DNA of 64,000 nt from Eutreptiella sp. 'Long Island Sound 2002' (lineage: Eukaryota; Protista; Euglenida). Shown here piece by piece: positions 851-38,298 of the stretch; position 1 is the stretch's first letter; every line of letters starts with the position of its first letter. Both the position numbers and the translations under genes were made by a program. The stretch covers positions 20,832,001-20,896,000 of the forward strand of contig OZ038378.1 in NCBI GenBank assembly GCA_964036045.1. The letters run 5' to 3'. The notes under the pieces are model-generated. The model saw only the letters and a program-made list of their open reading frames with translations, searched no databases and was not told the DNA's origin.

Positions 851-2935
851 CAATCATCTTGGAGGGGTTATGGGCCTTTGCCTTGACCCCCCGCTGCGGG
901 ATACGAGAGTTGAATGCTACACTGCTAAAGCAAGCAGGCGAGTGCAATACAACAAAGTCAGAACAAAAAGCTCTTCAGTGACATTGCCATAGGCGCCCTT
1001 CGCTGTGAAACAGGAAATACCCCGAGGTACAGTGCATAAGGGGGCTCATTCAGGTAACACGCACAAAGCTATTCCTACTGAAATGCCGGACACAAAGTTC
1101 GAACTACACCAGACCAACATCAGTGCACCCCCTCCCCCGGTGGACTCCCCAGCCCACTGACGCTGGACCCTCTGCCGAATTAGCCAGAGCACACAAAGTG
1201 TCGCCATCCGCTGCCCAATCGCCGCACCATTCTGTACATGGTCCTTCGTGTGGTACATGCCACAACGCATAGAAACCCAACCTCCACTCTGCTGTCCTTC
1301 GTAACCAGCCCCACAAATCTGCAACAGAAAACGACATATCTGACCCCCCCCCAAGCCCCCCCCCCCCGCCGGGCGTTGCTTGAGCGGAGGGGGGAGGGGG
1401 GGAGGGGGTCCAGGTGGGAGCCCCCCCCCCTTGCCGAAATGACCCATATCCACCAGAAATTGCAAAAATGCACCACACCGACCCATTCAGCAAAAACATT
1501 TGTCATAGTATCTGAAGACAGGTAATCAACTCATCTTTTTGGGTCCATACATTGTGCCCTCAGGCAACACAAACAGGAAACACGGAGGAATGCCAAATTG
1601 TTTGTCGAAGATCAATCAGAGTTCGACTCACCTGAGCTGGACTCACCAATGTGTTCCTCTTCTGAACTGCAAGAGGAACCACAAGAATCTGAGCAGGATG
1701 ACGAGTCACTACTTGGGGCGGACACTCATTTGTGTGGAACATGCTTTCTGTGCAACATTGTATGCCTCTTGCCTTTTCTTCCTAGTCCATCTATCTTGGA
1801 AGCAAAAATAGAGGATCGCGTTTATAATGTCGCCGCGTTTTGCGCGGGGACACAGTTGGACCCGGGTGCCGAAGAACGTACTTATGGGACGCGGGGACAG
1901 GGTGCCTGCAACAGAGGGAAGAAATGATACGAATGGAGTGATCAAAGAACCTTGCTGTAGGTACGCCAAAGGCGCGGGAGGAAAAAATTGGCCCAAAGCG
2001 AAAAAAGGTTCCCAGAACCCTGAATCTCAGGTGAATTAGAGTGGAGGGGGGAGCTGGGGAGGGGGTCTAGGGGAGGGGGGGGAGGGGGTCCAGGGGGGTC
2101 CGAAATGAAAATTAAAGCAACGCCCTGCCCCCCCTCCCCCCCCCCCGCTCCCCCCCCCCCCCTCCCCCCCCGCTCCCCCCCCGCTCCCCCCCCCCTCCCC
2201 CCCCCGCTCCAAGGGTTGGGTTTCCACCACACACAGCCTAAACGCAACCTAGACCATCTGAAAACTGCGACACAACAAGAGGACCTTGGTGACAGCATTG
2301 CGTTTGACGGCTTCATCCTGTTCCCACCAGTCGACAACGGCTTTGACTTGGGTGAGGCGACGCTGGTGTTTCTGACGTACAATGAGGCACAGGTTACTTT
2401 ATACCCATCTCACCCAACCCCTGCACGGCAAGGACCCGCATTGCTCTGTGCAACCCCTACCCCCCTCCAGCCTCGCCGCAACCAGAGCGCCTCGAATCGA
2501 GGCAGCAGGAATAGCCAAGGCTGTCAGGAGCAGTTCAGCAAATGCGCAGGAGTGGGAAGTGGAAAGGGAGGGTGATGCAAGGAGAATCAACGGCAGTTGG
2601 TGATTAAGCGACGGCGCTCAGTCAGCAGGTAATCGCGAGCCTGTTCTTCAGGGCCAGGGTGACTGACGAAGGTGTGTTGCTGTTCCTGTAAAAAAGCAGT
2701 CAACGTTGGCGATCAATCCTCAGTATCATGAACTTGGGGCTGCTTTCTCCTGAACTGTCTTTAGGGGATGTATACCATGGCTCAATTCTCCAAAGGTGAC
2801 CTCTTGAGGTTGCGTGTTGTTGCACCGGGTGCCAGAAACCTGCTAGAAACTTGTGACACCCGCTGAAACATTTCAAACATCTGAGACGGCAGGTGATGGA
2901 CATCGTGACATTCACAGCCATATGTCATCATTTCT

Positions 2936-3439
2936 TTGCTGTTTCTTTTGTCGGAGACTCTGCACCATTTGCTTTGCAACCTGAGATATGAACTGGGTCA
3001 CCTATTGAGTGAATTGGATGCCCACTGTGACACGCGCTCTACACTCTTGCATCACCATCGTGCAGGTGTCGGCAGATGTCCAGAAACCTTGTGGCAGGTG
3101 CGAACTCCCATCCTTGACTGTGCCTGTCAAGTGGCAGCATGGACTAGCTGCAAATGGCTCGGAAGGGCCTGGGGCGTCGCCAGGGCATCACTCTCTGTTC
3201 CCAATTTGTCGGTTGCAGATGTCTGCAATGTGGCCAGGATCGTCTCCCAGGAAACAGCAGTTTTATTCCTTCATGCGGAGGCCCTCCAATGCCAGCACTG
3301 CCCCACAACCTTTGCCCTTTGCCACCACCAACACCCGTTAGTCGGCACGAAGTTGCCCCCCACCACGGCCATAGGCCTCCTTCACAAAAAGGGTCCGATA
3401 ACAAAGTTTACCCAGGCACATGGGGATGGCGGTCTGTAG
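2936..3439 (+). CDS. Coding-like segment of unknown function (strand uncertain)
   Basis: 167 open codons with protein-like composition (LSETLHHLLCNLRYELGHLLSELDAH...VADVCNVARIVSQETAVLFLHAE). The antisense frame has 4 stops. No recognisable motif. Confidence 0.3.
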   Translation: MLFLLSETLHHLLCNLRYELGHLLSELDAHCDTRSTLLHHHRAGVGRCPETLWQVRTPILDCACQVAAWTSCKWLGRAWGVARASLSVPNLSVADVCNVARIVSQETAVLFLHAEALQCQHCPTTFALCHHQHPLVGTKLPPTTAIGLLHKKGPITKFTQAHGDGGL

Positions 3440-4964
3440 AACACGCACACCACACTGTGGCGCATCCCTTGCTACAAGTGGACGCGGTTTATTGATTGTA
3501 TTCACCACCGGCATGTTGTCGACAAGGCCTTTTTTGAGTGTATGCCTGAATATCCCTGTGGGGTGGGACTTCCCCTCCAGGGCCTGGTGGCTGGGTCTTT
3601 ACCCACCCCACCCGCGCGGCGTGGTGGGGGTAGGGGGTGCCCGTGCCCCAGTGTGCGTGTGTGTGTTGGGTGGTTGGGGGGGGCTTCATAGCAGACCACG
3701 TCTGCTTGCAGCAGACGGCATCTACAAACCACACCAGGTCCCATACCCCACACCCCCGTAGGGGTGGGGGTGGGTGCTTGGTCCTGAATCTAAACACCCA
3801 CAGCGCTTCCTCTCTGGGGATTGGTGGGTGTCCCTGCCCTACCAAAGGAGGAGCCTTTCCGGTTAGTGTGAGATGTTTTGGGCGCAATCCACAACTCTGG
3901 CTGCGCCCACTGTAGCGCTGTTGCCGGCGGAGCTGCAGCGTACGACTGTAGCGCCAGCAACGGCGCTACAGCGTAGCACGTGGCACACCTGCATCAGGGT
4001 AGTCATCATTTTGAGGAGGCAGTGTCGGATACGTCTGGCATTGACAACGGCTCTTATGCCTGAAGGCACCGCAAACACAGCACATGGTACAGTGCAAAGC
4101 GGGCGACCCGAATCACATGATCACATTCCACATTGTACTCGCACTCTAGTTTCATTTCAATGGAGCAACCGCATGCACTGTGGGTAACAGAGATGGACAA
4201 TGCCACACACCGTAACCCAGTGGAGAGATCAATTTCTTTAAAAAATTGCGGATGATATCCATCTCTGTGTCTGGATTCTTCCCCATCTGCAGAGCAATGA
4301 GCCATGTTGTGGAGGTTTGAGCTGGGGTTTGAGCTGCTGGGGTCTGTCTCTGCATGCAACCTGGCATTGTCGGTGCTGCTGTCACATGCTACGTCCTGCT
4401 GCCATTCCGCACCTTTCCATAGACTTGTGACCCCTGTAGCCACCATCAGCCGTCCCATCAAGACCCGGGCGCCCCTTTGCTGCCCATGCTGCCCGGGCCC
4501 TACATAGGCCTGCCCCAACCTATCGCAATCGTTCCCAAGCCTAGCAATCCATGGCAACACGTGTTCCGCCGCAAATGCAATCACAACTCCTTCCGTGTGG
4601 CAACCAAAACGGCACCAACCTTCACTCCACATTGCTGCATGTCTGTAGGTTGCATGAATCAAAAACGAATGCCTCTTATCCATCCATCCTGCCGCAGGGG
4701 CAGTGGGATACTGCAGCCTGTCGTGGAGGCTTATTCCTCTGCACAAATTTATCCATTGCCAAACGAAAATGTCAGCTCGGCAGGGCGGTGTTGCAGTCCT
4801 ACAGAGAACAGTGCCATTTGACACTGCATCTCATCATAAGTATGCATGGGTTCACAGGCTGCAGGTACAGTGCACGTAGTGCAAGACCGTCATCCCCACC
4901 GCACTGCCCAGGTCTCCCCGGATGCACCCCTCCTCCCTGCCCGGGCTTGCCTGGACTCTTGCAG

Positions 4965-5120
4965 AATTCGCCCGGAAAATACTGGGAAGGCTGGCCACCA
5001 TGATGTCTCAACTGCCGCTCGTCCTGCCTCGGGCGTTGCTTCAACTATCGCTGCTACCGCTGTCTGATGCTGTACTGCTGTTCCTCCGTGCCCTGGACAG
5101 CCTGGCGTGGCATGGGCAAG
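4965..5120 (+). CDS. Probable exon, Leu-rich helical segment
   Basis: Preceded by the acceptor-like ctcttgcag; reads FARKILGRLATMMSQLPLVLPRALLQLSLLPLSDAVLLFLRALDSLAWHGQ. The antisense frame has stops. Confidence 0.4.
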
Positions 5121-5686
5121 CAGGGTTCACTGTGCATGCTGTGCGAGGAAGTTGAGATTGCAGCGATCCATACAGCCCTGGATCGTATGAGGACCCGCCG
5201 GAGATCATGTTGCGTTGAGGGATGCGGAGGGTTTTGGTGGGTTCCGCTTCCAAAGTGGAGAGCAAGGGTTGTGGTGGGTTGTGGAGGGAGGGGCTGGTGG
5301 ACGCCACCATCTTATGGGGTTCATTGCTGCCCACTTCTCCTATTCTGCTCGTGTTCTGTGGTTTTTCGGGGCGCGGCCACTACCTACGGGCTGCATATTG
5401 TCAAGAGAGCATTTCGCTGAAGGGCTTAATTGCTTCCGGAGTTTTTTTTGCCGTCGCAAATGGGTACTAACACTGCAATTAGGGCTTGGCATAATGTGTT
5501 GTGAGCATTGGCTAACGAATGAACGTGTCTGATTCGTAAAGTAGCAGCATTCTCTTTCAAGATAATGCCACACATCCGCAGGATGTTGTCAGAAGACACG
5601 AAGCTAGTAGCTCAGAGTATCCCGGAGGCGTGCAATGCTACAAGCAACGTGCACACAAAACATGGCGTCGTCAGATGCACATGAGA

Positions 5687-5713
5687 CGGAAAAAAAATAG
5701 ACACTCAGAAAGT
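5687..5713 (-). ncRNA. Genomic copy of the euglenid spliced-leader (SL) exon (relic or pseudo-SL)
   Basis: Minus strand reads ACTTTCTGAGTGTCTATTTTTTTTCCG. The first 25 nt are identical to the euglenid SL ACTTTCTGAGTGTCTATTTTTTTTCG (recalled). Single copy; no recognisable 5S linkage or Sm site follows. Confidence 0.85.
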
Positions 5714-5877
5714 TAGACCACACTAAACTTAGACCAATCGTGTGCTACTAATCCAAATGTTACCTATTTGGAGTTGGAGGGGAGCCGCAACCATTTTGGA
5801 TTGTGACAAAAGGCTGCAAATTTGATGCAAATCTGCTCACAAGTCACAGCGCTGTAGAGACGGTGGTGATTTTTCTT

Positions 5878-6900
5878 TATGGAGCCTCGCCAACTCTCAC
5901 CAACTTTCCCCACAAAACCCTCATGGAATGAGAACCTGGCTCACCACTCGGGTGCGTCCCAACAACCCATGTCGCCATACACGGGAACTCGAACCGGAAC
6001 CTTTGCACGCATACCGAAATTGTCTTCAAGCCATGTTTCCAAGCAAACTCGACATTGAATGCATCCAATTCTTGTCCGGTTGTGCGTTCGACGAACATGC
6101 TTGACCCTCCACGTTGGTACCCGTTGATTGATGCATCTCTTTGGAAGAGGTTGAAAGACAACCTCTCCATCACGGTGCAAAAACACCGTTAATTGTAGTA
6201 CCTCATGGCCCCACAAACAATTGAGGCTCTGAAGAAAAACAGGTACACCAGAATTCGTCCATTAATTACATTTCCTTTTGAATGTTGCTCAAATGCATTT
6301 GTGAGCAACTTTGTCCTAACTTGATCAATTATCTTGTTTTGACAAGGGGTGCAAAGGGCACCTCCTATTTTGACAAGAGGCGCCTGCCGTCTTTTCTTGT
6401 ACATTCACACAGCCGTTATCCGGGAAACAAAGAAACGAATGAATTGAGCAAGTTGGAAATTTTTGCTGCGCATAGCAAAGTGTTCATCGGTTGTGGGCAC
6501 ACGATCCCCCAACAGTGGATCTAACACCGGTCTATGAGAAAGGTACCACTACTGTGGTTCTTTGTGGCGGAGTGTTTGTGCCCGATGGCTTTGGATTTTG
6601 GTGCACGTGCATCTCCCTCCTACCTCATGCTTGTCCCTCCTCGATCAAAACATAGGCGCCTTCCGTCCAAAGAGGAGGCTCACTGTTGTTTTCATGTCGC
6701 CCTAAGGCATTGAGTCGACATTTTGCTTTTTGGAGACAACCACCTCGGCTTGCAAGTGTAAGTACATTAGTTGATGCACATTCTCCTCTTTGAGTAGCCG
6801 AGACCTGGCATGATCACGGAATGATCTGGTGGAGAGATAAGAAGCACCGGGCAGCCAAAAAGGCGATCCAATATTCTACTCCATGTTGAAGCCTATTCTT
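5878..6900 (-). pseudogene. Decayed tyrosine recombinase of a DIRS/Ngaro-type retrotransposon
   Basis: One frame has only about 6 stops in 320 codons. It reads TP...KIIDQVRTKL...ILVYLFFFRAS (box I Arg, about 6230), SINGYQRG (SKxD..RG-like), then GSHSMR (HxxR, 5930-5919). The R-to-H spacing is 100 aa, comparable to known recombinases (about 96-116 aa). The catalytic Tyr is not clearly retained. Confidence 0.65.
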
Positions 6901-7809
6901 CCAAAACAACTTCTTATCCCCGCTCTCTTGCCTTTTCGTGTTCTTGTAGTGTCGCAACTTTGTTGACGGGATCCTAAGTGTCAAAATTTTGCCATTTGTG
7001 TTGAATTTTGCACGCCAGGAGGACTATCTATGACCACCGACAACGCCGTCGTTTGTCCCAGTTAAAATGTCATGCAAAGGACCACAATTTGCGGATTGAT
7101 GTCGCAGTGACGGGATGGTGCACACGTGCATGTGTGTCGATTTTGAGGCCAAGCTATGTTATCGGGTTCCTTGCAACTCCATACTTTGTTAGCACGGTCA
7201 ATGGCACCAAGCACTTACATATTATCATGCAGTCTCCCATTACTTGAACACACCATGCTCATAAATCCGCGCAAGCAGAATGAAGAGCAGCATGAAGAGA
7301 TCCTCAATGGCGGCCAACGATGTGCAATGACATGGGAGAGGAGTGAGTTTGCTTCACTTTTTCGTGTGTGAGTAGCCCTTGACCCTGCCCTTACCCTTAC
7401 CCCAAGCCACACAAGCGAACCTCATCGATGCCCATGTGCAGCCGGCTACGCATTTTGTTTCATCGGTACAGGTGCACTTGCTTGAACTTCCTAGTGCATG
7501 CATCCACCAAGGCAAGGGCCACTTCTTTGACCGTCAACAGCCAAGGTGTTTCCCCACTATCACACCTTACATGGACGGTCTGTTGTCCGATAGCCTCAAG
7601 CTTGTATAGAGGCCATTAGCCGCCAGCAAGCCTTACTTCTCTGAGCTCGGGCTTCGACTCGCCGTGGTGTTTGGAAGGCTCGGTGCAAAACATTTTGGGC
7701 AGAGCGGTTGTCGTACATGTACCCGCTCATTAGTGGACCCACCAACCAAAGGCACTTTATGAGACCCACCCCCATTTTTGGAGCCGGACCCAAGTCATAA
7801 CAAGAGACC

Positions 7810-8760
7810 CACTTGGAAACGTGCACTTTAAGAGTGGAAAACCTATTGGAAACCCCTTTTTGTGGGTGATGGCGGCATCATTTAACAACATGCATCATTG
7901 AAACATTGAATGATGAAAACTTTTGGGCTCAAGCATCGATGTGGTTCTCTCCGGTTCATGTCTCGGAAGCGTGTGAGACAACACTATCGAGTATCCGGTT
8001 GCAGTTGTCCGTCACACAGGGCTTGGGCTTTGGGTGGTCAAGGTCACCTTTGTTTCCTTGTGTGCCCCTTCAACGCAAATCAAAATAAAAAAAGGTCGGC
8101 TCGTTGGGTGCATATTGTCTCACGCAGTTCGAAAATGGGTCTCAAAAAGTTCCCGGATTAAAACACAAGCTCCACTATTTGCTAGGTACAATTTTTGCGG
8201 AAACCGCTCAAAAGGGTGGGTTCTTTGGCCACATTAACCTCCACATTGAGCTCCAAGTGAAGAAATACATCAAAGGCAAGGCACATATTGGATTCAAAGG
8301 ACCGCCCAACTCCCAACACGAACCACCATGTAATCTACACGACAAGGGGTGAGGGGTTGCAGTAGCACAGACAAAGTAGTCAAGCACCACCTTTAGCACA
8401 GATTGTCACAACAACCATCATTCTCCGCCATTCCCATCTATGGTCCCACATGCAAAATTGCACAAACACAAAGGCGGTTGAAAACTGATGCCAATCACCA
8501 TGCCTTTGAAGAGGACTCCTTCCAATGCCCAACTCCTTTGCAACACCCTTTACCAAATTGGTAGCATTCTTATTCAAAGGATAAGCGAAAAAAGCCGGCT
8601 TTGTTGGGGATCCATTGGGGTCATGTACCACTTTCTTTGGTGCTCCCCACGCTACATCTACCATCCAGTAATCAAAACCGGCCTCAAAATTTTCTCTCTT
8701 TTCGTGGATGTGGCAAGCGCGTTCCCAAATCCCGTCAGCAACTCACCAAGTGGAAGAGAG
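7810..8760 (-). pseudogene. Decayed reverse transcriptase and RNase H of DIRS/Ngaro type
   Basis: Motifs in the expected order across frameshifts: GAPKKVVHDPNGS (8640), VAK..R.P...DWH (8540-8488), MG (about 8440), VD(Y)MVV as a mutated YxDD (8338), FLHLELNVEVNVAK, GNFLRPIFEL (8154). Then RNase H-like TDN (8012) and FNVSMMHV...KGVSN (7910-7845). Confidence 0.6.
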
Positions 8761-9439
8761 CAAATCCATTAGCTACCGAGTGTAATAGCAATGAATTTAG
8801 CACTAATACATCGAGTTCGCTATGCATGCAAGCTTGGAAGCTTTAACCTCAGCAATGTAGGCAGTGGTAAAAATTCAGCAAACAATTGGCAAGCGGTGCC
8901 AAAATTTGGCCGGGGCAAGGGGGGTTTGGAGGGCCGTATTTGAGGTGATTTCTCTTTAATTTTGTCTACAGGCATCTATTACCTGAAAACTCCCCTTTCA
9001 ACTGCAGAAAGCGGCAAGAAAATGCTGGATAGAAAGTAGCGCGAGATAGCGGTTGACCTTCGAAAATCCGGATTATTGAAATAGGCAGACGGAGCAGGTG
9101 ATTCTGATATGTATCTATAGATCATAAAAAATTCATTGAACCCCAGAATTATCGCATCACGCCGAATTGATTTTTTCGCTCCCTTTCGACGGGTTCGTGA
9201 TTCCGAAGGTGACCGCGACATCTTTCAAAACGGGCCGAAATTTGACCAGCCTCCGTCATCGGCTCGATTGCAGCTAATGTTTTTCCAACGCAGAGCTCGT
9301 GGCCGTGGAACGAAAAGCTGGATATGTTGTGTTCGCAGAATGCTGGAGAGTGTTCGAGTCTCCCAAGACACACAGAAACGCCTGCCTTTGAACCTGGTGT
9401 GAAACCCTTCCATGCAATGAAAAGACCGTCAATGACAAG

Positions 9440-11210
9440 AGACACAAAGCAAAACACATTCAATCATTCTCAAACTTATCATACACCAAACAATGCATCC
9501 ATCCACATCATCGTCGCAGACTGTGTTGCATTGAAGAATACACCACGGTACTTTGGGGTAGCATTTGTGAGCCCGGAGGTGAAAAAGTCACGCACAGGCC
9601 CTCTTCAGCAACAGCAGATTGACCTATGTAAACAGCATACGATATGCCTGGTTTTGATTTTCAAAGTTCTGGCTAATTTATCGCAATGAGTAACCCATTG
9701 CTTCAATGGCTTGGCAACCTAAGGCTCCAAGCCCCAAACAATACGTGTTGTCCTTATAGACCGGCCATGATTGGTTTTTTTTTCACGGCATATGAACGGA
9801 TGAAAAGCTTTCTTTGGGTATCTTCATACTTTGCGATGTGCATATTTTGCTTCCTTTTTTGCATGTCACCTATCCTACTTTTTACATGTTGCATTTCTTA
9901 ATATCTTTTTCCATCGTAATATTCATTGGTGACAATCTTGAGCCGCTTCAGCTGTGTATTCTGCTTTTTGAGACTGATGCGCCACAGCGGGTCGTTGGTG
10001 GCTATAAGCATTTTACGGCATCGCTGGTAGTTCTCTTTGGCGTTTTATTTTTGGTGATGCTTCAGATCTTATAGTTCAATTGCTGCTCGTGCTCCCCATT
10101 CCAAATTTGAGACATCCAACATTGTCGATACCTTCGGGCGCATTGAGCATCCTCTATGAGCCCGTGAATGTCATGGACAGGGTGCGGCATTGCTTATAAG
10201 CATTTGCAATGCGTTCATCTTGCTCATTGTGCTTGTTTTTCGTTCGGACTTGAAGAATACACCATCAAACCGCATTGGAACTACATGGTTCCAATGAGGG
10301 CGTCGGCAACACGCTCAACCAACTTCCACAGTGTTTGGCAGCACTAGTGGCACTTGATGTCATCTTTATCCTCTTTAGTATCTTGTGTGGTCTTTAAGTT
10401 CAAACATCTTTCAACTGGAACACATGCTTTTAAGTACCTTTTAGACAAGCCACGGGCAATGCATCTACCTTGAAAGCCGGTTCATATACGTTTTTTGTCC
10501 ACAATAGGGCTTGTGCGTGGCACGCATGCCTTTGTTAAGTAAACTCAGTCCCTAAGTTGTTGGCGCGGAGTTAGGTGCTTGTCGTCTTGGGAATATAGAA
10601 TTGCCATACATCTTTGTTTACTTGTTCTATGTCGTGCTTGCCTAGAGAACACATCTATGTGTTTGTGGCTTGAAAAAGTGAGTCACTTTCCTTTGTACAA
10701 TTCATCATACTCTTAAGTGGATTAAAAGTTTGGGCGGACCTACGGCCTCTGTTCATCCTAACGCGGCATCAAGGCCGCCTACCAATGCGGATGCCGTAGG
10801 CAATCAACCGCTTGGTGGCCGTACCGAAGTAGGAACAGCAATTCACCTTTTTTTCGAAGTGTTTTTTGGTTACTTTCTGCCGTTTTGGTGTTGTTGGCGT
10901 GGTTGCATTATGTCTGCCCATGTGCCAACAACAGTGCCCTCCTTGGCCACTACCTCTTGCTTCGGTCTTAGCAAGGTGCGGAAACCCAATCGTTTACGTC
11001 TTTGGCCCATGGTCTTGGCCGTAATCTCAAGATTTGGAAAGTAGCAGTTTGTGTCATGTTGGAATCTATCTTTACTTATGTTCGTCATGCCTTTGTGCAT
11101 GATCCATACCCTTGTCTGATAGACAAGGTATAACCACTGAGTTAAAGCAGTATAATGCCCCATGTCTTCGCTGTGATGAGAGGTACACACCATGTTCATC
11201 ATCGTCAATA
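9440..11210 (-). pseudogene. Decayed ~570-codon basic/helical ORF, possibly Fanzor/TnpB-like
   Basis: Composite translation gives, in order, IATNDP (9993), RLKIVTNEYY (9924), KLFIRSYAVKKK (9810), VLFGAWS (9744), RSICCC (about 9620) and LQCNTVCDDDVDG (9536). Each motif is degenerate and frameshifts are required. Confidence 0.33.
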
Positions 11211-12724
11211 TAAAGCATATGTCCGAGTTCTTTGTCCTATTACATTGATGTATGATGGAGAGATCTGCACCCTGGTTAGCCCTCTAGTTCACCTCCCCCC
11301 CCCCATGGGGGGCTTTTAATTGGGGGGCCGGGGAATGGGGCCCCGCCCCCCTCTAAAAGCAGTCGTTATGCCATTATATACAATCCGCGCGCCGAAACGA
11401 AACATACCTCAAAAGTGTACGATGAAGCCCCTCCAAATGACCGCCTCGGAGAGCTGATTGGCGCCGTCATATTTGTTTTGATGACTCATGGCTGTTTTAC
11501 AAAGTTAGGACCTTTACCAGGTTTTAACTTCTTTACCAGCATCCACTAATTCCATATAAGCTAGGGATGCGATTTAAAGGTGCACTAGCAAAGTTGAGGT
11601 GCCGAACAACACTATCAAGAAGCCACAGGCCCCAAAACGCAAGAAATCTTTTTTGAATGTTCTTAACCGCATCAACTTGTTCTGGGGCTGACGTCCCCCA
11701 ATGGAAGACCTCGTGAGAATATGTACACTACTTGGAGTACAGAATATATCACGGAGGCGGTTCGCCTAGGAAAGCGAAAAAGATGTCTCTGATGGTTTCT
11801 TGGTGTAGACTGATTGGTAGGTTTTGGTGATGAATTGGTTGCACTGAGGCTTGTTGTAAGCAGGGGGCTGGGTTCAGCTCGCACAGAAAAATGCAGGTGC
11901 ACTGGGGAGTGTAGGCTGTGTTTTTCTTTCTGTGTGTTTTTCCATGTTTGTTTCCATGCAGTCAACTGCTGGAGGGGCGGTGGAAAACTTGTGGTTTGCT
12001 TTTGTGTTTCTGGGCCTATTGTGGGGTGTACTGCCCCGGTGGTTAGCCGGGTTTCCTGCCCCTGGGTCGGCCATACTCCACAGCAGCGAAAAGATAGTGG
12101 AAAATTAGAATGCATTGTTACTCAAAAACACCTGCAAGGTGTGGCGTCAGGGGACCTGAGTTCGTGTCAGGAGAGAAACTCATGTGTCTGAGTTGTCATA
12201 AGTTATATAGAGGCTGAAAACGTATTCATGGTGTCATAGCAATCAAAAAGAGGGCAAACCTGAATATTCTTGTGGGCTCCAGGACGTATTTAAAGGGCTG
12301 CCAGCCAAAGGGCAGGGCTCTGGTGTTAAGTCAAAATTCAGATTGAGTTTTAGATCAGAAGTAGATGCAGTGGACAGTCGGCGGTAGTTTAAACACTTCT
12401 TAAGTTGCTTGGTCATCAGTTCTTCAGAGAGAAGGACTGGACATGGTGCAGCGTAAGTGGAGAGCTCGGAAGGATGGTCGATGTGGGCTTTGGAGGCAGT
12501 CCACATTCATGCCTGGCTGCAATGGTGTACTGCAGCGCTGTCAAACTCGGTGGCTGTCATCATGGCCGCTGGCGGATGGAGTTGTTGATCATCAATAAGC
12601 ACTTGGGACAGAGCGACGCATAGGAACGGGCTGCGTTGTTGTTTTCATGTTAGTAGAGGCTGTTGCTACTGGCCGCAGTGGTGTGCTGTAGCACGCGCTT
12701 CGGGGAACGAGTCAATTGTTCATC

Positions 12725-13335
12725 AGGGAGCTCGTCTCGTCACTAACCGGCGGCGGTCGTGGCAGACAGGCTTCGAATATTGGAAAGGCGTTGAACGGAA
12801 GCTCATATTCAGTCACACGGCGCTGGCATGCAGGCCTTGCGAGTCATTTGTTTGTCAGGGAGCTTGCTTTATCGTAATCCGGCGCCGGTTGAGGCAGACA
12901 GGCTTCGAGCATCGGAAGACGATGAACGGAAGCTCATATTGAGTCACACGGCGCTGGCGGGCAGTCCTTCCGGCTCATTTGTTTATCAGGGAACTTGTTT
13001 TATCAAAATCCGGCGGCGGTTGAGGCAGACAGGCTTCGAACATCGGAAGACGGTGAACGGAAGCTCATCTTGAGTCACACGGCGCTGGCGGGCAGTCCTT
13101 GCCAGTCATTTGTTTACCAGGGAACTTGTTTTATCAAAATTCGGCGGCGGTTGAGGCAACAAGCTTCGAACATTGGAAAGACGGTGAACGGAAGCTCATC
13201 TTGAGTCACACGGCGCTGGCGGGCAGGCATTGCGAGTCAACTTATCAGGGAACTCGTTGTATCCAAATCCGGCGGCTGTTGAGACAGACAGGCTTCTGAA
13301 AACATTAAAACGGAGAACGGAAGCTCTTTTTGAGT
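12725..13335. repeat. Tandem array of about 4.6 copies of a ~130-bp unit
   Basis: The anchor (G/A)GCTTC falls at 12769, 12901, 13032, 13162 and 13291 (periods 132, 131, 130, 129). Shared blocks are GAACGGAAGCTCAT, GTCACACGGCGCTGGC and TCAGGGAACT. Confidence 0.92.
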
Positions 13336-16300
13336 CTTTCGGAGTCTTTTGGCACGCAGGCAATGCGGATCTTGATTGATCTCCATGCCGGCACTTGATC
13401 TTTCTCAAAATCAACGGGAGTGCACCCAGTTGAAGCGGTGTTTGTGTAACATAGTTGGGCTGGCTTTCGGTAATCGGCGGTATCCTCAGCTGCAGCAGAA
13501 AGACGGATACGCCGCGTCAAGCGGCCGATAGCTCCTGAAGACGGGCTGGACCCCTCGGGTCATCCGCAAATTCTTTTTTTGCATACTTTGAAAGGATTGG
13601 GTAATTCCGCTTGCCATTGGAAATTATTGTGAGCAACTGGCGTCTTATCACCTGTGCCAAGGGCGAAAAAATCGCGAGCGCGCGCCATTCAAAGGGAAAA
13701 AAAAACACAAGAAATCTATTTGCTATATTATTTATTTGCTGTGCACGCGTGCATTTCGCAGTCGCCGGCATTTGCGATCTTTCATTTTGACTGTCCAAAG
13801 TGAAATCGGGCTACTGTGCAGGAAATATCGATCTAAGACCAATCTTATAAATGATTCTAGAAGCCGCATCTTGCTGTTTAATTGGAAAACCGCCGTCATT
13901 TTGTTTTAGCAGCGCTTTTCGATTTCACGGTTCTCAGCGCACGCAGACGCCTTTTTGGGCTCAAAAATGAAAACAACACTCCCGAGTTGACCAAAATTGC
14001 CTGTAATTTTGTCAAAATCCGATACAATGGGCCCGAGTTAAGAATATGTCAATTGTATGCTATTTGCACCCTGTGTCGCTAATCTTGCCCAATGCACCCT
14101 CCCTGTCCTTGCGCTGCTAGCTTAAACATAAGGCAAAGGAGTGTTTTTGCCTTTGTTTGTCACCGCCCGGCTCCATTTCCGACATGGAAAGGCGACCCGA
14201 AAATGGCTAGAAATGTAATAAGGCTTTTCTTTTGATGGTGCTTCGCACCAGCAAAGGAAAAGCCAGACCAAGGACGAAACACGAAGGATTCATTTAATCC
14301 TACTTTTCCACATCCTCCACAACGTATCATGTATCATTGCTTCATTGAAATTTCCTCAAAATGCTCATCGTTCTTTGTTATAGATACTTGATCATGCACG
14401 TGCATATCGTGCAATCTGACTTCCACGTCCGACACATACCCTTCAGAGGCATCACAGCCCGCACATTGCCCTTCCCCATCTCGTGGAGCCCCCCTCCGCT
14501 TGTTATATCTACAGCTGGCAATGATACATTCTTATTTGCTATGGTACGCGATGTAGAAAAGGGCGGAACTCAACCTTGCAATTTGAATTCTGAGTACATT
14601 AAGGTTTCTATGAAACATTTATTTTCACAACAAATTAGCATTTAATTTGTCTTTATGCAATTGAGGCAGGGGTTGGAATGTTTCTTTGTCAGTACTGTTT
14701 TTTTTTAATGTCGCAGATTATAGAAATTGAATCCCAAAAATGTGCCTGCGAATAGTACAGTGGCGAAATTAAAGTAAATTTTGTCCGCAAAAGCTAGCCA
14801 GAAAAAAATTGCATGGAAATTGAGTAGCACTAAAGCAGAACCAAAATTTGCAAGCTAGCAAAACAAAATGTATTAACTACATAACAGCCCACGTTGCAAA
14901 AGGGCTATTGAATACAGTGTAGATCTAAAACACGCTGACGTAGTAAATAGTATAGCTTGTTATCAATAAATGGATTGTTTTCCAATCAGAGAATGTTCTA
15001 AACCATGTTCGAAAAGATATGACATTTGTTAGCACCATTCTGAATTTAGATGCCCAAAAAATATGTGGTTATCTAAGTTTTGATACGAAATACAGTTTCA
15101 ATACAACCATTTCTGGTTTTTTTTTGTTCAATGCAGTATTCTCCTCTTTTGTACCTGGGCCAAAAAATGTTTTCTGCCCACGAAATCCCAAAATTGGTAG
15201 AGTAAGATTATTGAATATAGGCGATAAACACTGCATTTTTGAGTGCAAATGACTAAATGCATAATGCTTAAAGGGCTAAGCGAATTATGTTTAGCTTTAG
15301 GTCATCATAATGCGGCACACTACGGCGAGATTATGAGTTTCTGTGTTTCTACTTTTTTGACACTATGTAGGCCATTTTCCCCCATTTGCCTACCTATCGG
15401 TTGTTAAAGTGGACGGTGTACAAAGGTTTGGAGCAAACTTTTCCATTGATCTTGATCATGTTGAATTTTTTTCGCATGTTTGTTTCAATATACCAAAGCT
15501 TTTCCATTCATGGTGCTGGGCAAAGCGCAACGGATAAATGGAAACTTTCTTATTTTCCATGGACATGATATGGTGTATTGTGTCTTGATTCAACTTCTCA
15601 AACATGTTCATCACATTTCGTAACATATGAAGAGACATCATGCAAGCTACCTCCATTGCCAAGTCAATAATCTTCATCAATATCAATCTCATCCCACTTT
15701 GCTACTAATCCCACTCATAGCAAGTGACATCTTCATGGTTTACATATTTCACCGACCTAGGATGGAAATGGACCGAGAATGAATTGCCATTCTGCCATTT
15801 TGTGTTGTCACTCGGTGGAATTTTTAGGAAATCGAAATAAATACCGAAAGATTTGGAAAACGTGCAACCACTTGGTACCGACATAGCCGTGGTCATTTAC
15901 CGGATTTTCTTTCAATTATTTTTATTGTCATCTTCCCGCAAATGCTCATTTTCTGCCACAAAAGCTGCAACACATATTCTGTGGATTTTGTACCTTTAGG
16001 TTAGCGAACCTTTTTTACAGATACCTTTCTATTTGCGTAACCTTTCGTTTATTGTACTTTTGTTGCAATTCTTTTCTACCTTTCTTCCACTTTTTAACGG
16101 CACGGATGCGAATTCTCCAAAAACCAAACCTCATGATCGAAACCTTAAAACATGATAAATGGATGAAGCTGTGCAAAAGCACTTGGGAGCAGCAAATGCA
16201 TAAAATGCACTTTCTTCATTTCCTGAACAAACTTGTTAAAATGCGTCCAGCTGCAAAGCTGAATTTTTACAATGCTATTTGGATACTGCAGGCTCAAATT

Positions 16301-36540: not shown

Positions 36541-38298
36541 AGGGATAGGAGTAGGCTGAGGATTGGGGGTGGGTGTTAGAGTCAAGGTTGGGTTTAAGGA
36601 TAGTGTTGGGGTGCAAATTGGACAAAATTTTCCTTAGGGCACCTTTGGTGTTCCTGGAGCATCGGGCGCCTTAGGCGCCCATGGACGCCTGGGGGCGACA
36701 ACTTTGGCAACTAACTGTTGGCCGAAGGCCCCTAGGGGGGGGGGGGGGGGGGGGGGGGCAGGGGTAGTTGGCGTCCTAGGACCCGCGGAGTCGCCCCCCC
36801 CCGGGGCAAACGCATAGCGCTAGTGTTGCCTTTTGAGGACCAGAAAATTTTAACCTGAGGCACCCCTCCTCCTTTTTCGCGACGACCAGCACTGTTTCGC
36901 CGTTTGACCACCGGGTGGTTGTTGCACAATGGTTTACCGCAAAAAAAGGGGGGGGGGGCGCCGTTTGACGAGGCGGTGATCGTTGCACACGACGGTCGTT
37001 GCGCAAAGGGGGAGGGAGGGGTTGTACCGCGAGCCCGTAGTTACAGGCACACCCGCCCTGGTCGTCATCCTATTTCTTGCTGGACACTTTTGATGAAAAT
37101 TTCTTCGGAATTCACAATCGCTGCCACTAAACGCCTGATTGACGACTCGCATTGGCAAACCTTTGCCCACCAGCGGTCCCCAGTCGGCATACAAACCACA
37201 CAAGCGTTTTGGTGGCAACCAGTCCAGGTCCAAGACCGAGGGGCCACCCCATGTGAAAGGACTGTCTGAGGACGAGTGGTACATGAGATTGGCTGCCCCC
37301 TCACAACTACTTCAAACGATCAGCACGTCGTGTTGATCGTCCCTGTTGCCCAGCGACCGGAGGAGGGGAAGAAGGTCCATTGTGGGGGCTTGCCCGGGAC
37401 GTCCTACCGAATGCCCCTGCAGTGCACTGCCAGCTCCAACCAGCGCACCACACGTGCAGCTGTTTGCTACCAACAAAACATTCATGTCTGAGGTGAGGGG
37501 AACCAGTTTCGTATAAAATTGATGATACCAATCACCGGAAATTGAACGAGCCAATTGTTGGAAGGCCTCCCCTCCTTTGGGCATTCTGGGACGACTCGGC
37601 CAGAAACACCCGACCACACCCACCCACAGGCCACAGAACCCCCCCACTCCACTCTACCGTACCCGAGCAAATATCTGTCTCAGACCGCACGAGGTGCCGC
37701 GCTCGGAGCTGTGCCGCATCGCTTCAGACGGGGTCCCTGGAGCTTCATGAAAGGAGGGTGGTCCACCGGGGGTCACATGAGCATGGGCCGTAGGCCCATG
37801 AAGATGTCAGCAAAGACCTCTGCGCCGATGAAATGGCAGAAGTGCGGGGGGTGGAGCGCCCAACGCCAACGGTCCGCCAAGGACTCCCAAGTCGAGCAGA
37901 TGCCGGTCCTTTTCACGAGCGGTGTGGACGGCCCCCTGTGCCGTGGTCCAACGCGTGCGCCCGACCGTACGTCCAAACAACGCAAGACTGCCCGGGCCAT
38001 CTCAATTTGTTTGGGGGGGGGGCTGAGACTTTTCCCGCAACACCTCCCGAGACGGGCCCACTATGCGCCCGTTGTGCGAAGACTGGGCAGTCGTACACCT
38101 CTCAATCTCCCCAACCCTCCATCTTCCCGACCGACACGCTTTCCGCGACGGTTCTGTGCGGACTGCGCAATGCTGCCGAGGTCGATGACCCACTCGTTGC
38201 TGATGACATCTGAGATGAGCGGGAGGGAGAGGCGTGGTTGTGGCGGTGATTCAGTGGTCGTGGGGGTAGCAGGGTAGCAGTCTCTGCAGTGTGCGAGT

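What the first reader, a model, noticed from the sequence alone, without database searches (positions are those of the whole stretch)
5687..5745. Euglenid spliced-leader exon at the 3' end of a tyrosine-recombinase retrotransposon
Seen: 25 consecutive nt identical to the euglenid SL on the minus strand. It is about 165 bp downstream of the recombinase frame and in the same orientation, and is preceded by a short direct duplication (TGGTCTAAGTTT / TGGTCTAACTTT) whose second copy overlaps the SL start. Established: known SL-targeting retroelements (SLACS, CZAR and CRE in trypanosomatids; NeSL in nematodes) are non-LTR elements, and relic SLs on retrocopies are known from dinoflagellates. Inference, three alternatives: (a) a tyrosine-recombinase retrotransposon family that integrates at SL 5' ends; (b) the element's mRNA is trans-spliced, so the SL became part of its split terminal repeat; (c) a chance neighbour of an SL-bearing retrocopy. 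I know of no description of (a) or (b) for DIRS-type elements.
Basis: partly seen in the sequence, partly recalled or inferred. Interest (0 to 1): 0.85.

Follow-up and report, generated by a model that had tools for sequence, protein, structure and literature searches.

The report
Leader-tagged retrocopy of a repeat tail
The Euglena spliced leader here is real, but it is the front end of a tiny (about 108-letter) DNA copy of a trans-spliced repeat RNA that landed beside unrelated DNA, not the rear end of a recombinase-carrying jumping gene.

Summary
The exact 25-nt Euglena gracilis spliced leader (SL) lies at 5689-5713 (minus strand), with none expected by chance. It belongs to what follows it, not to what precedes it.

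The SL is joined to 81 nt (5686-5606). These are the 3' terminal piece of a dispersed repeat of about 620 bp with about 54 copies. SL-less copies read ...cttcacAG|TCTCATG at the join, which is a splice acceptor.

Three other loci (L069, L070, L071) carry the SL at the same acceptor. Their flanks are unrelated, and they derive from at least three sub-lineages of the repeat. This is therefore an SL-capped retrocopy of an internally trans-spliced repeat RNA.

Upstream, 5714-6447 is unique in the 2.28-Gb genome. It holds an expressed, itself trans-spliced exon (6229-6015). The only other copy of 6448-8575 (contig C4) has no SL within 20 kb.

I found no tyrosine recombinase, reverse transcriptase or terminal repeat. 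This rests on Pfam scans of all minus-strand frames of 50 aa or more, phmmer against 1.84 billion proteins, and a repeat search.

The scan has already noted SL-headed LINEs and retrocopies elsewhere in this genome. This is a small further example. I found no published description for Euglena.

The parts
5687..5713 (-). Spliced-leader relic: exact 25-nt SL (5713->5689), one extra C (5688), then the SL's terminal G (5687).
   Evidence: There are 3041 exact 25-mers in the genome and none in the reversed control.
5606..5686 (-). 81-nt 3' terminal piece of a dispersed repeat of about 620 bp. It ends ...CTGAGCTACT and is joined to the SL exactly after the repeat's internal ...cttcacAG acceptor.
   Evidence: about 35 genomic matches covering only these roughly 82 nt at 85-99% identity; alignments with SL-less copies; 54 copies of the tail motif.
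5709..5736 (-). Short direct duplication (12 nt, 1 mismatch) whose second copy spans the flank/SL boundary. It may be a templated filler or microhomology at the 5' junction, or chance.
   Evidence: The upstream 40 nt has no significant similarity to the SL as a whole (score 10, reached by 40% of random windows).
5714..6447 (.). Flank immediately upstream of the SL (minus sense). It is single-copy DNA, not part of any repeat.
   Evidence: no second genomic match for query positions 2754-3487.
6015..6229 (-). Expressed exon that is itself trans-spliced. The acceptor ...ttttcttcAG is at 6230-6229. The match stops at 6015, followed in the DNA by GTATGC (a donor-like site).
   Evidence: table 8. 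Record 28 of run X6 (a guessed RNA run) is 244 nt. It consists of 22 nt of SL followed by 6229->6015 with 0 differences.
6448..8575 (.). Two-copy segment. The other copy (C4:152135403-152143193) is 93-97% identical and is interrupted by three extra insertions. Two of these have 8-bp target duplications and inverted ends.
   Evidence: No SL in the 20-kb C4 region.
8172..8711 (.). Diverged dispersed repeat (more than 40 copies at 67-80% identity) of unknown nature, with no recognisable protein domain.

Best explanation
The SL is the 5' end of a DNA copy of a processed RNA, about 108 nt long (5713->5606, minus strand). A transcript of a non-coding dispersed repeat of about 620 bp was trans-spliced at an internal acceptor 81 nt before the repeat's fixed 3' end. 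This produced SL + 81 nt. That short RNA was reverse-transcribed and inserted here, most probably by the same (LINE-type) machinery that spreads the repeat by recognising its 3' tail.

The insertion site is single-copy DNA about 300 nt downstream of the first exon of an expressed, trans-spliced transcript, in the same orientation. It is therefore probably in that transcript's intron or downstream region.

Shown:
- SL identity.
- A junction exactly at an AG acceptor of the source repeat.
- Recurrence of the same junction at 4 loci with unrelated flanks.
- A fixed 3' end and variable 5' ends in the repeat family.
- Uniqueness of the upstream flank.

Inferred:
- Spliceosomal trans-splicing as the source of the junction.
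- Reverse transcription primed at the tail.
- The identity of the enzyme.
For: 1. SL-less copies of the repeat read ...ctgccttcacAG|TCTCATGTGCATC where the window reads SL...CG|TCTCATGTGCATC. All end at ...CTGAGCTACT, followed by unrelated DNA.
2. A genome-wide pattern search finds the SL-to-TCTCATGTG junction 4 times: the window, L069 (C12), L070 (C6) and L071 (C10). Each has different DNA on both sides.
3. The four copies carry the diagnostic characters of different repeat sub-lineages. L069 has the deletion of L076/L077. The window has the tctcatg/gcacgcc type of L039-41. L070 and L071 have the tcttatg/gcgcgcc type. This implies at least 3 independent events at the same acceptor.
4. Family copies start at many different points but end at the same point. 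In one search, query starts run from 1299 to 1902 and ends are at 1948-1952. This is the pattern of RNA-mediated, 3'-primed copying.
5. L078 is a further copy of the family headed by an SL at another position.
6. Of 30 exact SL sites sampled on contig C1, 10 are true SL RNA genes. These have a conserved upstream sequence and a GGTATATACTCGC... intron, and a 5S rRNA gene lies beside L001. In the 20 others the SL heads varied sequence. Eleven of these fall in three multi-copy families with long open frames and unrelated upstream flanks.
7. The sequence after the SL is unrelated to the SL RNA intron.
Against: - There is no poly(A) tract at the 3' end, and no target-site duplication longer than 5 nt at any of the five SL-headed copies. 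The usual hallmarks of LINE-mediated insertion are therefore missing. The SL-less family members lack A-tails too.
- I could not show RNA reads with this junction, because no usable RNA run was on offer.
- No autonomous element sharing the tail was found.
- No empty site was available to fix the insertion boundaries.
Confidence: 0.85

Rival explanations
1. One reading: a tyrosine-recombinase (DIRS-like) retrotransposon occupies 5720-8800 and integrates at SL 5' ends, so the SL marks its 3' junction.
For: An open frame (5880-6188, minus) ends 166 nt before the SL in the same orientation. A 12-nt duplication overlaps the SL start. Tyrosine-recombinase genes are common in this genome.
Against: - No Pfam family at E<=1 for any of the 20 minus-strand frames of 50 aa or more in 5714-8800.
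- phmmer of the adjacent frame against 1.84 billion proteins gives only itself plus chance hits.
- No direct or inverted repeat of 25 bp or more in 4000-10500.
- 5714-6447 is single-copy.
- The other copy of 6448-8575 has no SL.
- The three other loci with this SL junction have unrelated upstream DNA.
- Part of the supposed element is an expressed trans-spliced exon.
Confidence: 0.02
2. Template switching instead of trans-splicing. A reverse transcriptase copying the repeat RNA jumped onto an SL RNA or an SL-capped mRNA, creating the SL-tail chimera without any spliced RNA.
For: Template jumps at RNA 5' ends are known for non-LTR reverse transcriptases (established knowledge). The odd duplication at the 5' junction and the extra C at the SL/tail join hint at untidy joining.
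Against: The join is at the same nucleotide in four loci from at least three sub-lineages. On one side it coincides with a pyrimidine-rich ...AG acceptor, and on the other with the exact 3' end of the SL exon. Random jumps would scatter.
Confidence: 0.06
3. One founder. A single SL-tail copy became a master (a SINE-like unit of about 108 nt), and the four loci are its offspring rather than repeated trans-splicing events.
For: All four share the same junction. The window and L069 share a 3' extension ...TACTAGCT, and L070 and L071 share ...GAGCAACA.
Against: The copies carry characters of different SL-less sub-lineages. An example is L069's internal deletion, shared with L076/L077. A single founder would need parallel change or conversion. 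Only 4 of 54 tails carry the SL.
Confidence: 0.12
4. A variant SL RNA gene: the SL plus about 80 nt would be a functional donor RNA.
For: The total length (about 108 nt) is close to that of an SL RNA.
Against: - There is no GT after the SL exon. The sequence reads CG|TC, whereas genes read CG|GTAT.
- No similarity to the SL RNA intron.
- None of the conserved upstream sequence or 5S rRNA neighbour of true genes.
- No Rfam match.
Confidence: 0.01

Closest known systems
Relic spliced leaders on retroposed mRNAs of dinoflagellates
   Same: A complete SL, which is added only to RNA, sits in genomic DNA fused at a splice acceptor to the copied transcript. This proves passage through a processed RNA.
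   Different: The copied RNA here is an 81-nt end piece of a non-coding repeat, not a gene. There is no poly(A) relic and no stack of truncated SLs at this locus. The organism is a euglenid. My searches of the held library found no paper describing this for Euglena.
SL-headed LINEs and SL-capped retrocopies noted earlier by this scan in the same genome (s1-202943, s1-222705, s1-219445, s1-228086)
   Same: The SL is at the 5' end of the inserted unit, the upstream DNA is unrelated, and the same genome is involved. One earlier case also lies in an intron and is fused to the tail of a repeat.
   Different: This unit is much shorter, with an internal acceptor only 81 nt from the 3' end. The same junction recurs at four loci. 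I did not confirm the LINE identity of the other families myself (one search gave no RT domain in their first 500 aa).
SL-gene-targeting non-LTR elements (SLACS, CZAR, CRE, NeSL)
   Same: A retroelement sits physically next to SL sequence.
   Different: Those elements insert into the SL exon of SL RNA genes within their arrays. Here the SL is intact, is not part of an SL RNA gene, and is the 5' end of the inserted RNA copy rather than the target.
DIRS/Ngaro/VIPER tyrosine-recombinase retrotransposons
   Same: Nothing demonstrable at this locus beyond an open frame in the same orientation.
   Different: No recombinase, RT/RNase H or terminal repeats, and the adjacent DNA is single-copy.

Membership tests
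SL-bearing retrocopy (relic SL of a retroposed processed RNA) | Full SL sequence in genomic DNA outside an SL RNA gene (no donor GT or intron, no gene promoter context) | tested here: met
   CG|TCTCATG follows the SL. True genes read CG|GTATATACTCGC and share a conserved upstream sequence and a 5S rRNA gene neighbour.
SL-bearing retrocopy (relic SL of a retroposed processed RNA) | SL joined to the copied sequence at a site that is a splice acceptor (AG) in the source sequence | tested here: met
   Nine of the ten SL-less copies aligned read ...cacAG immediately before TCT(C/T)ATGTG (L074: TTTCATGTG); one, L041, reads AA.
SL-bearing retrocopy (relic SL of a retroposed processed RNA) | Independent insertions: the same unit at other loci with unrelated flanks | tested here: met
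   L069, L070 and L071.
SL-bearing retrocopy (relic SL of a retroposed processed RNA) | Poly(A) relic at the 3' end and a target-site duplication | tested here: not met
   There is no A-tract, and the longest flank match is 4-5 nt. SL-less family members also lack A-tails.
SL-bearing retrocopy (relic SL of a retroposed processed RNA) | The spliced RNA form exists in the transcriptome | not testable with these tools
   No usable RNA run was offered. The one guessed RNA run is 4 Mb and shows only other SL-headed contigs.
Tyrosine-recombinase (DIRS-like) retrotransposon | Tyrosine recombinase open reading frame | tested here: not met
   Pfam at E<=1 on all minus frames of 50 aa or more in 5714-8800; phmmer against 1.84 billion proteins. 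PF00589 does find more than 100 recombinases elsewhere in this genome.
Tyrosine-recombinase (DIRS-like) retrotransposon | Reverse transcriptase / RNase H frame | tested here: not met
   no RT family in the window pieces or in the open frames of related copies.
Tyrosine-recombinase (DIRS-like) retrotransposon | Terminal repeats (inverted or split direct) | tested here: not met
   no direct or inverted repeat of 25 bp or more in 4000-10500.
Tyrosine-recombinase (DIRS-like) retrotransposon | Multiple genomic copies with shared ends | tested here: not met
   5714-6447 is unique. 6448-8575 has one other copy with different neighbours.
SL-gene-targeting non-LTR elements (SLACS/CZAR/CRE/NeSL) | Insertion at a fixed position inside the SL exon of an SL RNA gene | tested here: not met
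   The SL is uninterrupted and is not in an SL RNA gene.
SL RNA gene | SL exon followed by a GT donor and the conserved intron, with conserved upstream sequence | tested here: not met

The most novel reading that the evidence does not exclude
The last roughly 81 nt of this repeat may be a sufficient cis-signal for a euglenid reverse transcriptase. Its internal acceptor may be a regularly used trans-splice site. The cell would then repeatedly make a capped SL-tail RNA of about 108 nt that is both a retroposition substrate and possibly a small RNA with a role of its own. That would give a minimal, testable 3' recognition element for Euglena retroposition.
Probability: 0.3. Interest if true: 0.5.

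Novelty: new member of a known kind. Interest (0 to 1): 0.33.

Why it matters
It removes a claim that would have been striking: a recombinase retrotransposon tied to spliced leaders.

It adds a clean, very small example showing that in Euglena gracilis trans-spliced RNAs are copied back into DNA. The SL gives the exact 5' end of the RNA and the repeat gives the exact 3' end. The same junction arose several times. Together these point to a short 3' tail as the part that the copying machinery needs.

Genome annotators should treat dispersed SLs (about 3000 exact copies here) as markers of the 5' ends of retrocopies, not of what lies upstream.

Tried and rejected
- **Pfam on open frames near the SL.** I scanned 20 minus-strand and 3 plus-strand pieces of 5714-8800, 15 frames of 2936-5588, and 8 open frames of related copies. 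Nothing relevant came up.
- **Other protein searches.** The search for homologous proteins on the longest open frame of a related repeat copy gave no hit. ESM Atlas on the 120-aa frame 8383-8742 gave no lead.
- **Neighbouring recombinase element.** I fetched the element noted 34 kb away (L055) as a comparison. Only a gag zinc knuckle was recognisable there. No frame of it matches 5700-9500, so the comparison is uninformative.
- **A decayed, truncated SL relic upstream of the SL.** Rejected: the alignment score is no better than 40% of random windows.
- **The repeats at 4448-4993 as downstream exons of the expressed transcript.** Rejected: all six frames are equally conserved, so this is DNA-level repeat similarity.
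- **Target-site duplications.** None longer than 5 nt.
- **Rfam.** Nothing in 5400-6300 or in the parent repeat.
- **Reads.** No RNA run holds the locus. The contigs of a second organism label (X4) do not bridge the junction, so presence or absence there is open.
- **More genome loci.** A larger sample of the 3041 SL sites was therefore not possible.

Full report
**The observation.** The window holds one exact copy of the 25-mer ACTTTCTGAGTGTCTATTTTTTTTC, at 5689-5713 on the minus strand. No further match appears at up to three mismatches, and none appeared in 100 shuffles. The published E. gracilis SL is ACTTTCTGAGTGTCTATTTTTTTTCG (PMC6242988; an SL primer is also given in PMC5654406).

After the 25-mer the DNA reads C-G and then TCTCATGTG. 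The SL is therefore complete apart from one extra C. Its length equals the 9-T variant seen at L069 and L078. Contigs of 847 nt from runs X1 and X3 cover 5631-6477 without a difference. The junction is therefore not an assembly join, although these runs may be the assembly's own sample.

**What the SL is attached to.** The genome is 2.28 Gb in 2317 contigs, and the window is C1:20832001-20896000. A search with the DNA downstream of the SL gave about 35 matches, all covering only the first roughly 82 nt after the SL, at 85-99% identity.

In the best of these (L039-L042) there is no SL. The 82 nt are the last part of a longer repeat that always ends ...CTGAGCTACT and is followed by unrelated DNA. 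At the point where the window has SL...CG|TCTCATGTG, the SL-less copies read ...ctgccttcacAG|TCTCATGTG. That is a pyrimidine-rich stretch and an AG, the form of a splice acceptor.

The family reaches about 620-650 bp. Its copies begin at many different points but end at one point. A motif of the tail occurs 54 times at up to three mismatches, with none in the reversed control. The tail is unrelated to the SL RNA intron, and nothing in Rfam matches.

**The same junction elsewhere.** A pattern for the T-run of the SL followed by TCTCATGTGCATCTGACG found four places in the genome: the window, C12:36300582 (L069), C6:136993322 (L070) and C10:26838115 (L071). Each carries a somewhat decayed SL joined at the same nucleotide. 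Each ends at the family's 3' end and has different DNA on both sides.

The four copies carry characters of different SL-less sub-lineages:
- L069 shares an internal deletion with L076/L077.
- The window matches the L039-41 type.
- L070 and L071 match a third type.

The junction was therefore made at least three times. A fifth copy (L078) is headed by an SL at another position of the family.

**What lies upstream.**
- Window 5714-6447, directly upstream of the SL in minus sense, has no second match in the genome.
- Window 6448-8575 has one other copy on contig C4 (93-97% identity). That copy has three extra insertions, two with 8-bp target duplications and inverted ends. There is no SL in the 20 kb around it.
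- Window 8172-8711 belongs to a diverged dispersed repeat with no recognisable domain.
- All 20 minus-strand frames of 50 aa or more between 5714 and 8800 were scanned against Pfam at E<=1. There was no recombinase, RT or any credible family. PF00589 does find more than 100 recombinase genes elsewhere in the genome.
- The frame that ends 166 nt before the SL (5880-6173) was run by phmmer against 1.84 billion proteins. It found only itself and two chance hits to repeat proteins.
- There are no direct or inverted repeats of 25 bp or more in 4000-10500.

Part of this flank is instead a transcribed exon. A 244-nt contig of a small, probably RNA, run (X6, record 28) consists of 22 nt of SL followed by 6229->6015 on the minus strand, without a difference. 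The DNA has ...ttttcttcAG before 6228 and GTATGC after 6015. The SL relic thus lies about 300 nt downstream of the first exon of a trans-spliced transcript.

**The wider pattern.** The genome has 3041 exact SL 25-mers. I read 30 of them on contig C1.
- Ten are true SL RNA genes. They share a conserved upstream sequence and a GGTATATACTCGC... intron, and a 5S rRNA gene lies beside L001.
- In the other twenty the SL is followed by varied sequence and preceded by unrelated DNA.
- Eleven of those twenty fall in three multi-copy families that open directly into long reading frames.

In this genome a dispersed SL therefore marks the 5' end of what follows it. Earlier notes of this scan reached the same view for LINEs and gene retrocopies on other DNA of this genome. 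I confirmed the pattern on my own sample, but not the LINE identity of those families.

**Mechanism.** The best-supported course of events is as follows:
1. A repeat copy is transcribed.
2. The SL is trans-spliced onto the internal acceptor 81 nt from the 3' end.
3. The RNA of about 108 nt is reverse-transcribed from its tail and inserted.

The exact coincidence of the SL's 3' end with an AG acceptor in several independent copies argues for splicing rather than random template jumps. The family's fixed 3' end and ragged 5' ends argue for 3'-primed copying.

Three things are missing: an A-tail, a clear target duplication and RNA evidence for the junction. The 7-nt TGGTCTA duplication at the 5' junction may be a templated filler made on joining, or chance. 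The upstream 40 nt is not significantly SL-like.

**Comparison and verdict.** This works like the relic-SL retrocopies of dinoflagellates and like the SL-headed elements already noted in this genome.
- It is not an SL RNA gene.
- It is not an SL-gene-targeting element of the SLACS/NeSL kind.
- It is not, on any test I could run, part of a tyrosine-recombinase retrotransposon.

The held literature yielded no description of SL relics in the Euglena genome. The phenomenon may be unpublished, but this locus is only a small further instance of it.

Noticed in passing
window 6015-6229 (-): A contig of a probable RNA run joins the SL to 6229->6015 without a difference. The acceptor is ttttcttcAG, and the DNA has a donor-like GTATGC after 6015. 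This is an expressed trans-spliced exon in single-copy DNA. Its 52-codon frame has no known relative.
   Followed up: partly
L011-L030 (20 dispersed SL sites on contig C1), position -1 of the SL: Sixteen of the 20 retrocopied SLs are preceded by a C, and five by AC. True SL RNA genes read ...gtAC|ACTTTC, and a published SL primer starts ACACTTTC (PMC5654406). The SL RNA may therefore start one or two nt before the canonical 26-mer.
   Followed up: partly
L012 (C1:1042750) and L030 (C1:22768904): At L012 a full SL is followed by a second near-complete SL and a truncated relic (AGTGTCTATTTTTTTTCG). At L030 a second SL lies about 60 nt upstream. These look like records of repeated rounds of trans-splicing and retroposition.
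   Followed up: no
L056/L057 (C4:152128000-152147999), local 8087-8687 and 11274-14463: Two insertions are absent from the window copy. Both have 8-bp target duplications and short inverted ends (TAGGATTG.../...CAATCGTA and GGGAGCTCAC.../...GTGAGCACCC). They look like recent cut-and-paste (hAT-like) transposon insertions.
   Followed up: partly
G000 contigs C16:21.8-22.3 Mb, C25:20.65-20.97 Mb, C22:19.45-19.53 Mb and others: More than 100 PF00589 (phage-integrase type) matches lie in long intact frames of 250-730 aa. Many sit in dense clusters, and the same proteins recur on several contigs. They may be large integrated elements or duplicated blocks.
   Followed up: no
L011 182-1516 (-): An SL directly heads a 445-aa open frame with a C-type lectin domain (E 7e-8). 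This is a candidate SL-headed retrogene.
   Followed up: no
L039 700-1030 and about 375 genomic matches: A very abundant, nearly identical (98-100%) unit of about 325 bp is preceded by 217-bp tandem repeats. It was the insertion site of one parent repeat copy.
   Followed up: no
window 36655-36801: A 49-aa stretch is 90% identical to a frame of the element 34 kb before the window (L055 1814-2152, minus). It is another fragment of that repeat family.
   Followed up: no
L049 2736-3446 (+): An open frame with an animal haem peroxidase domain (E 5e-17) lies next to a copy of the 8172-8711 repeat.
   Followed up: no
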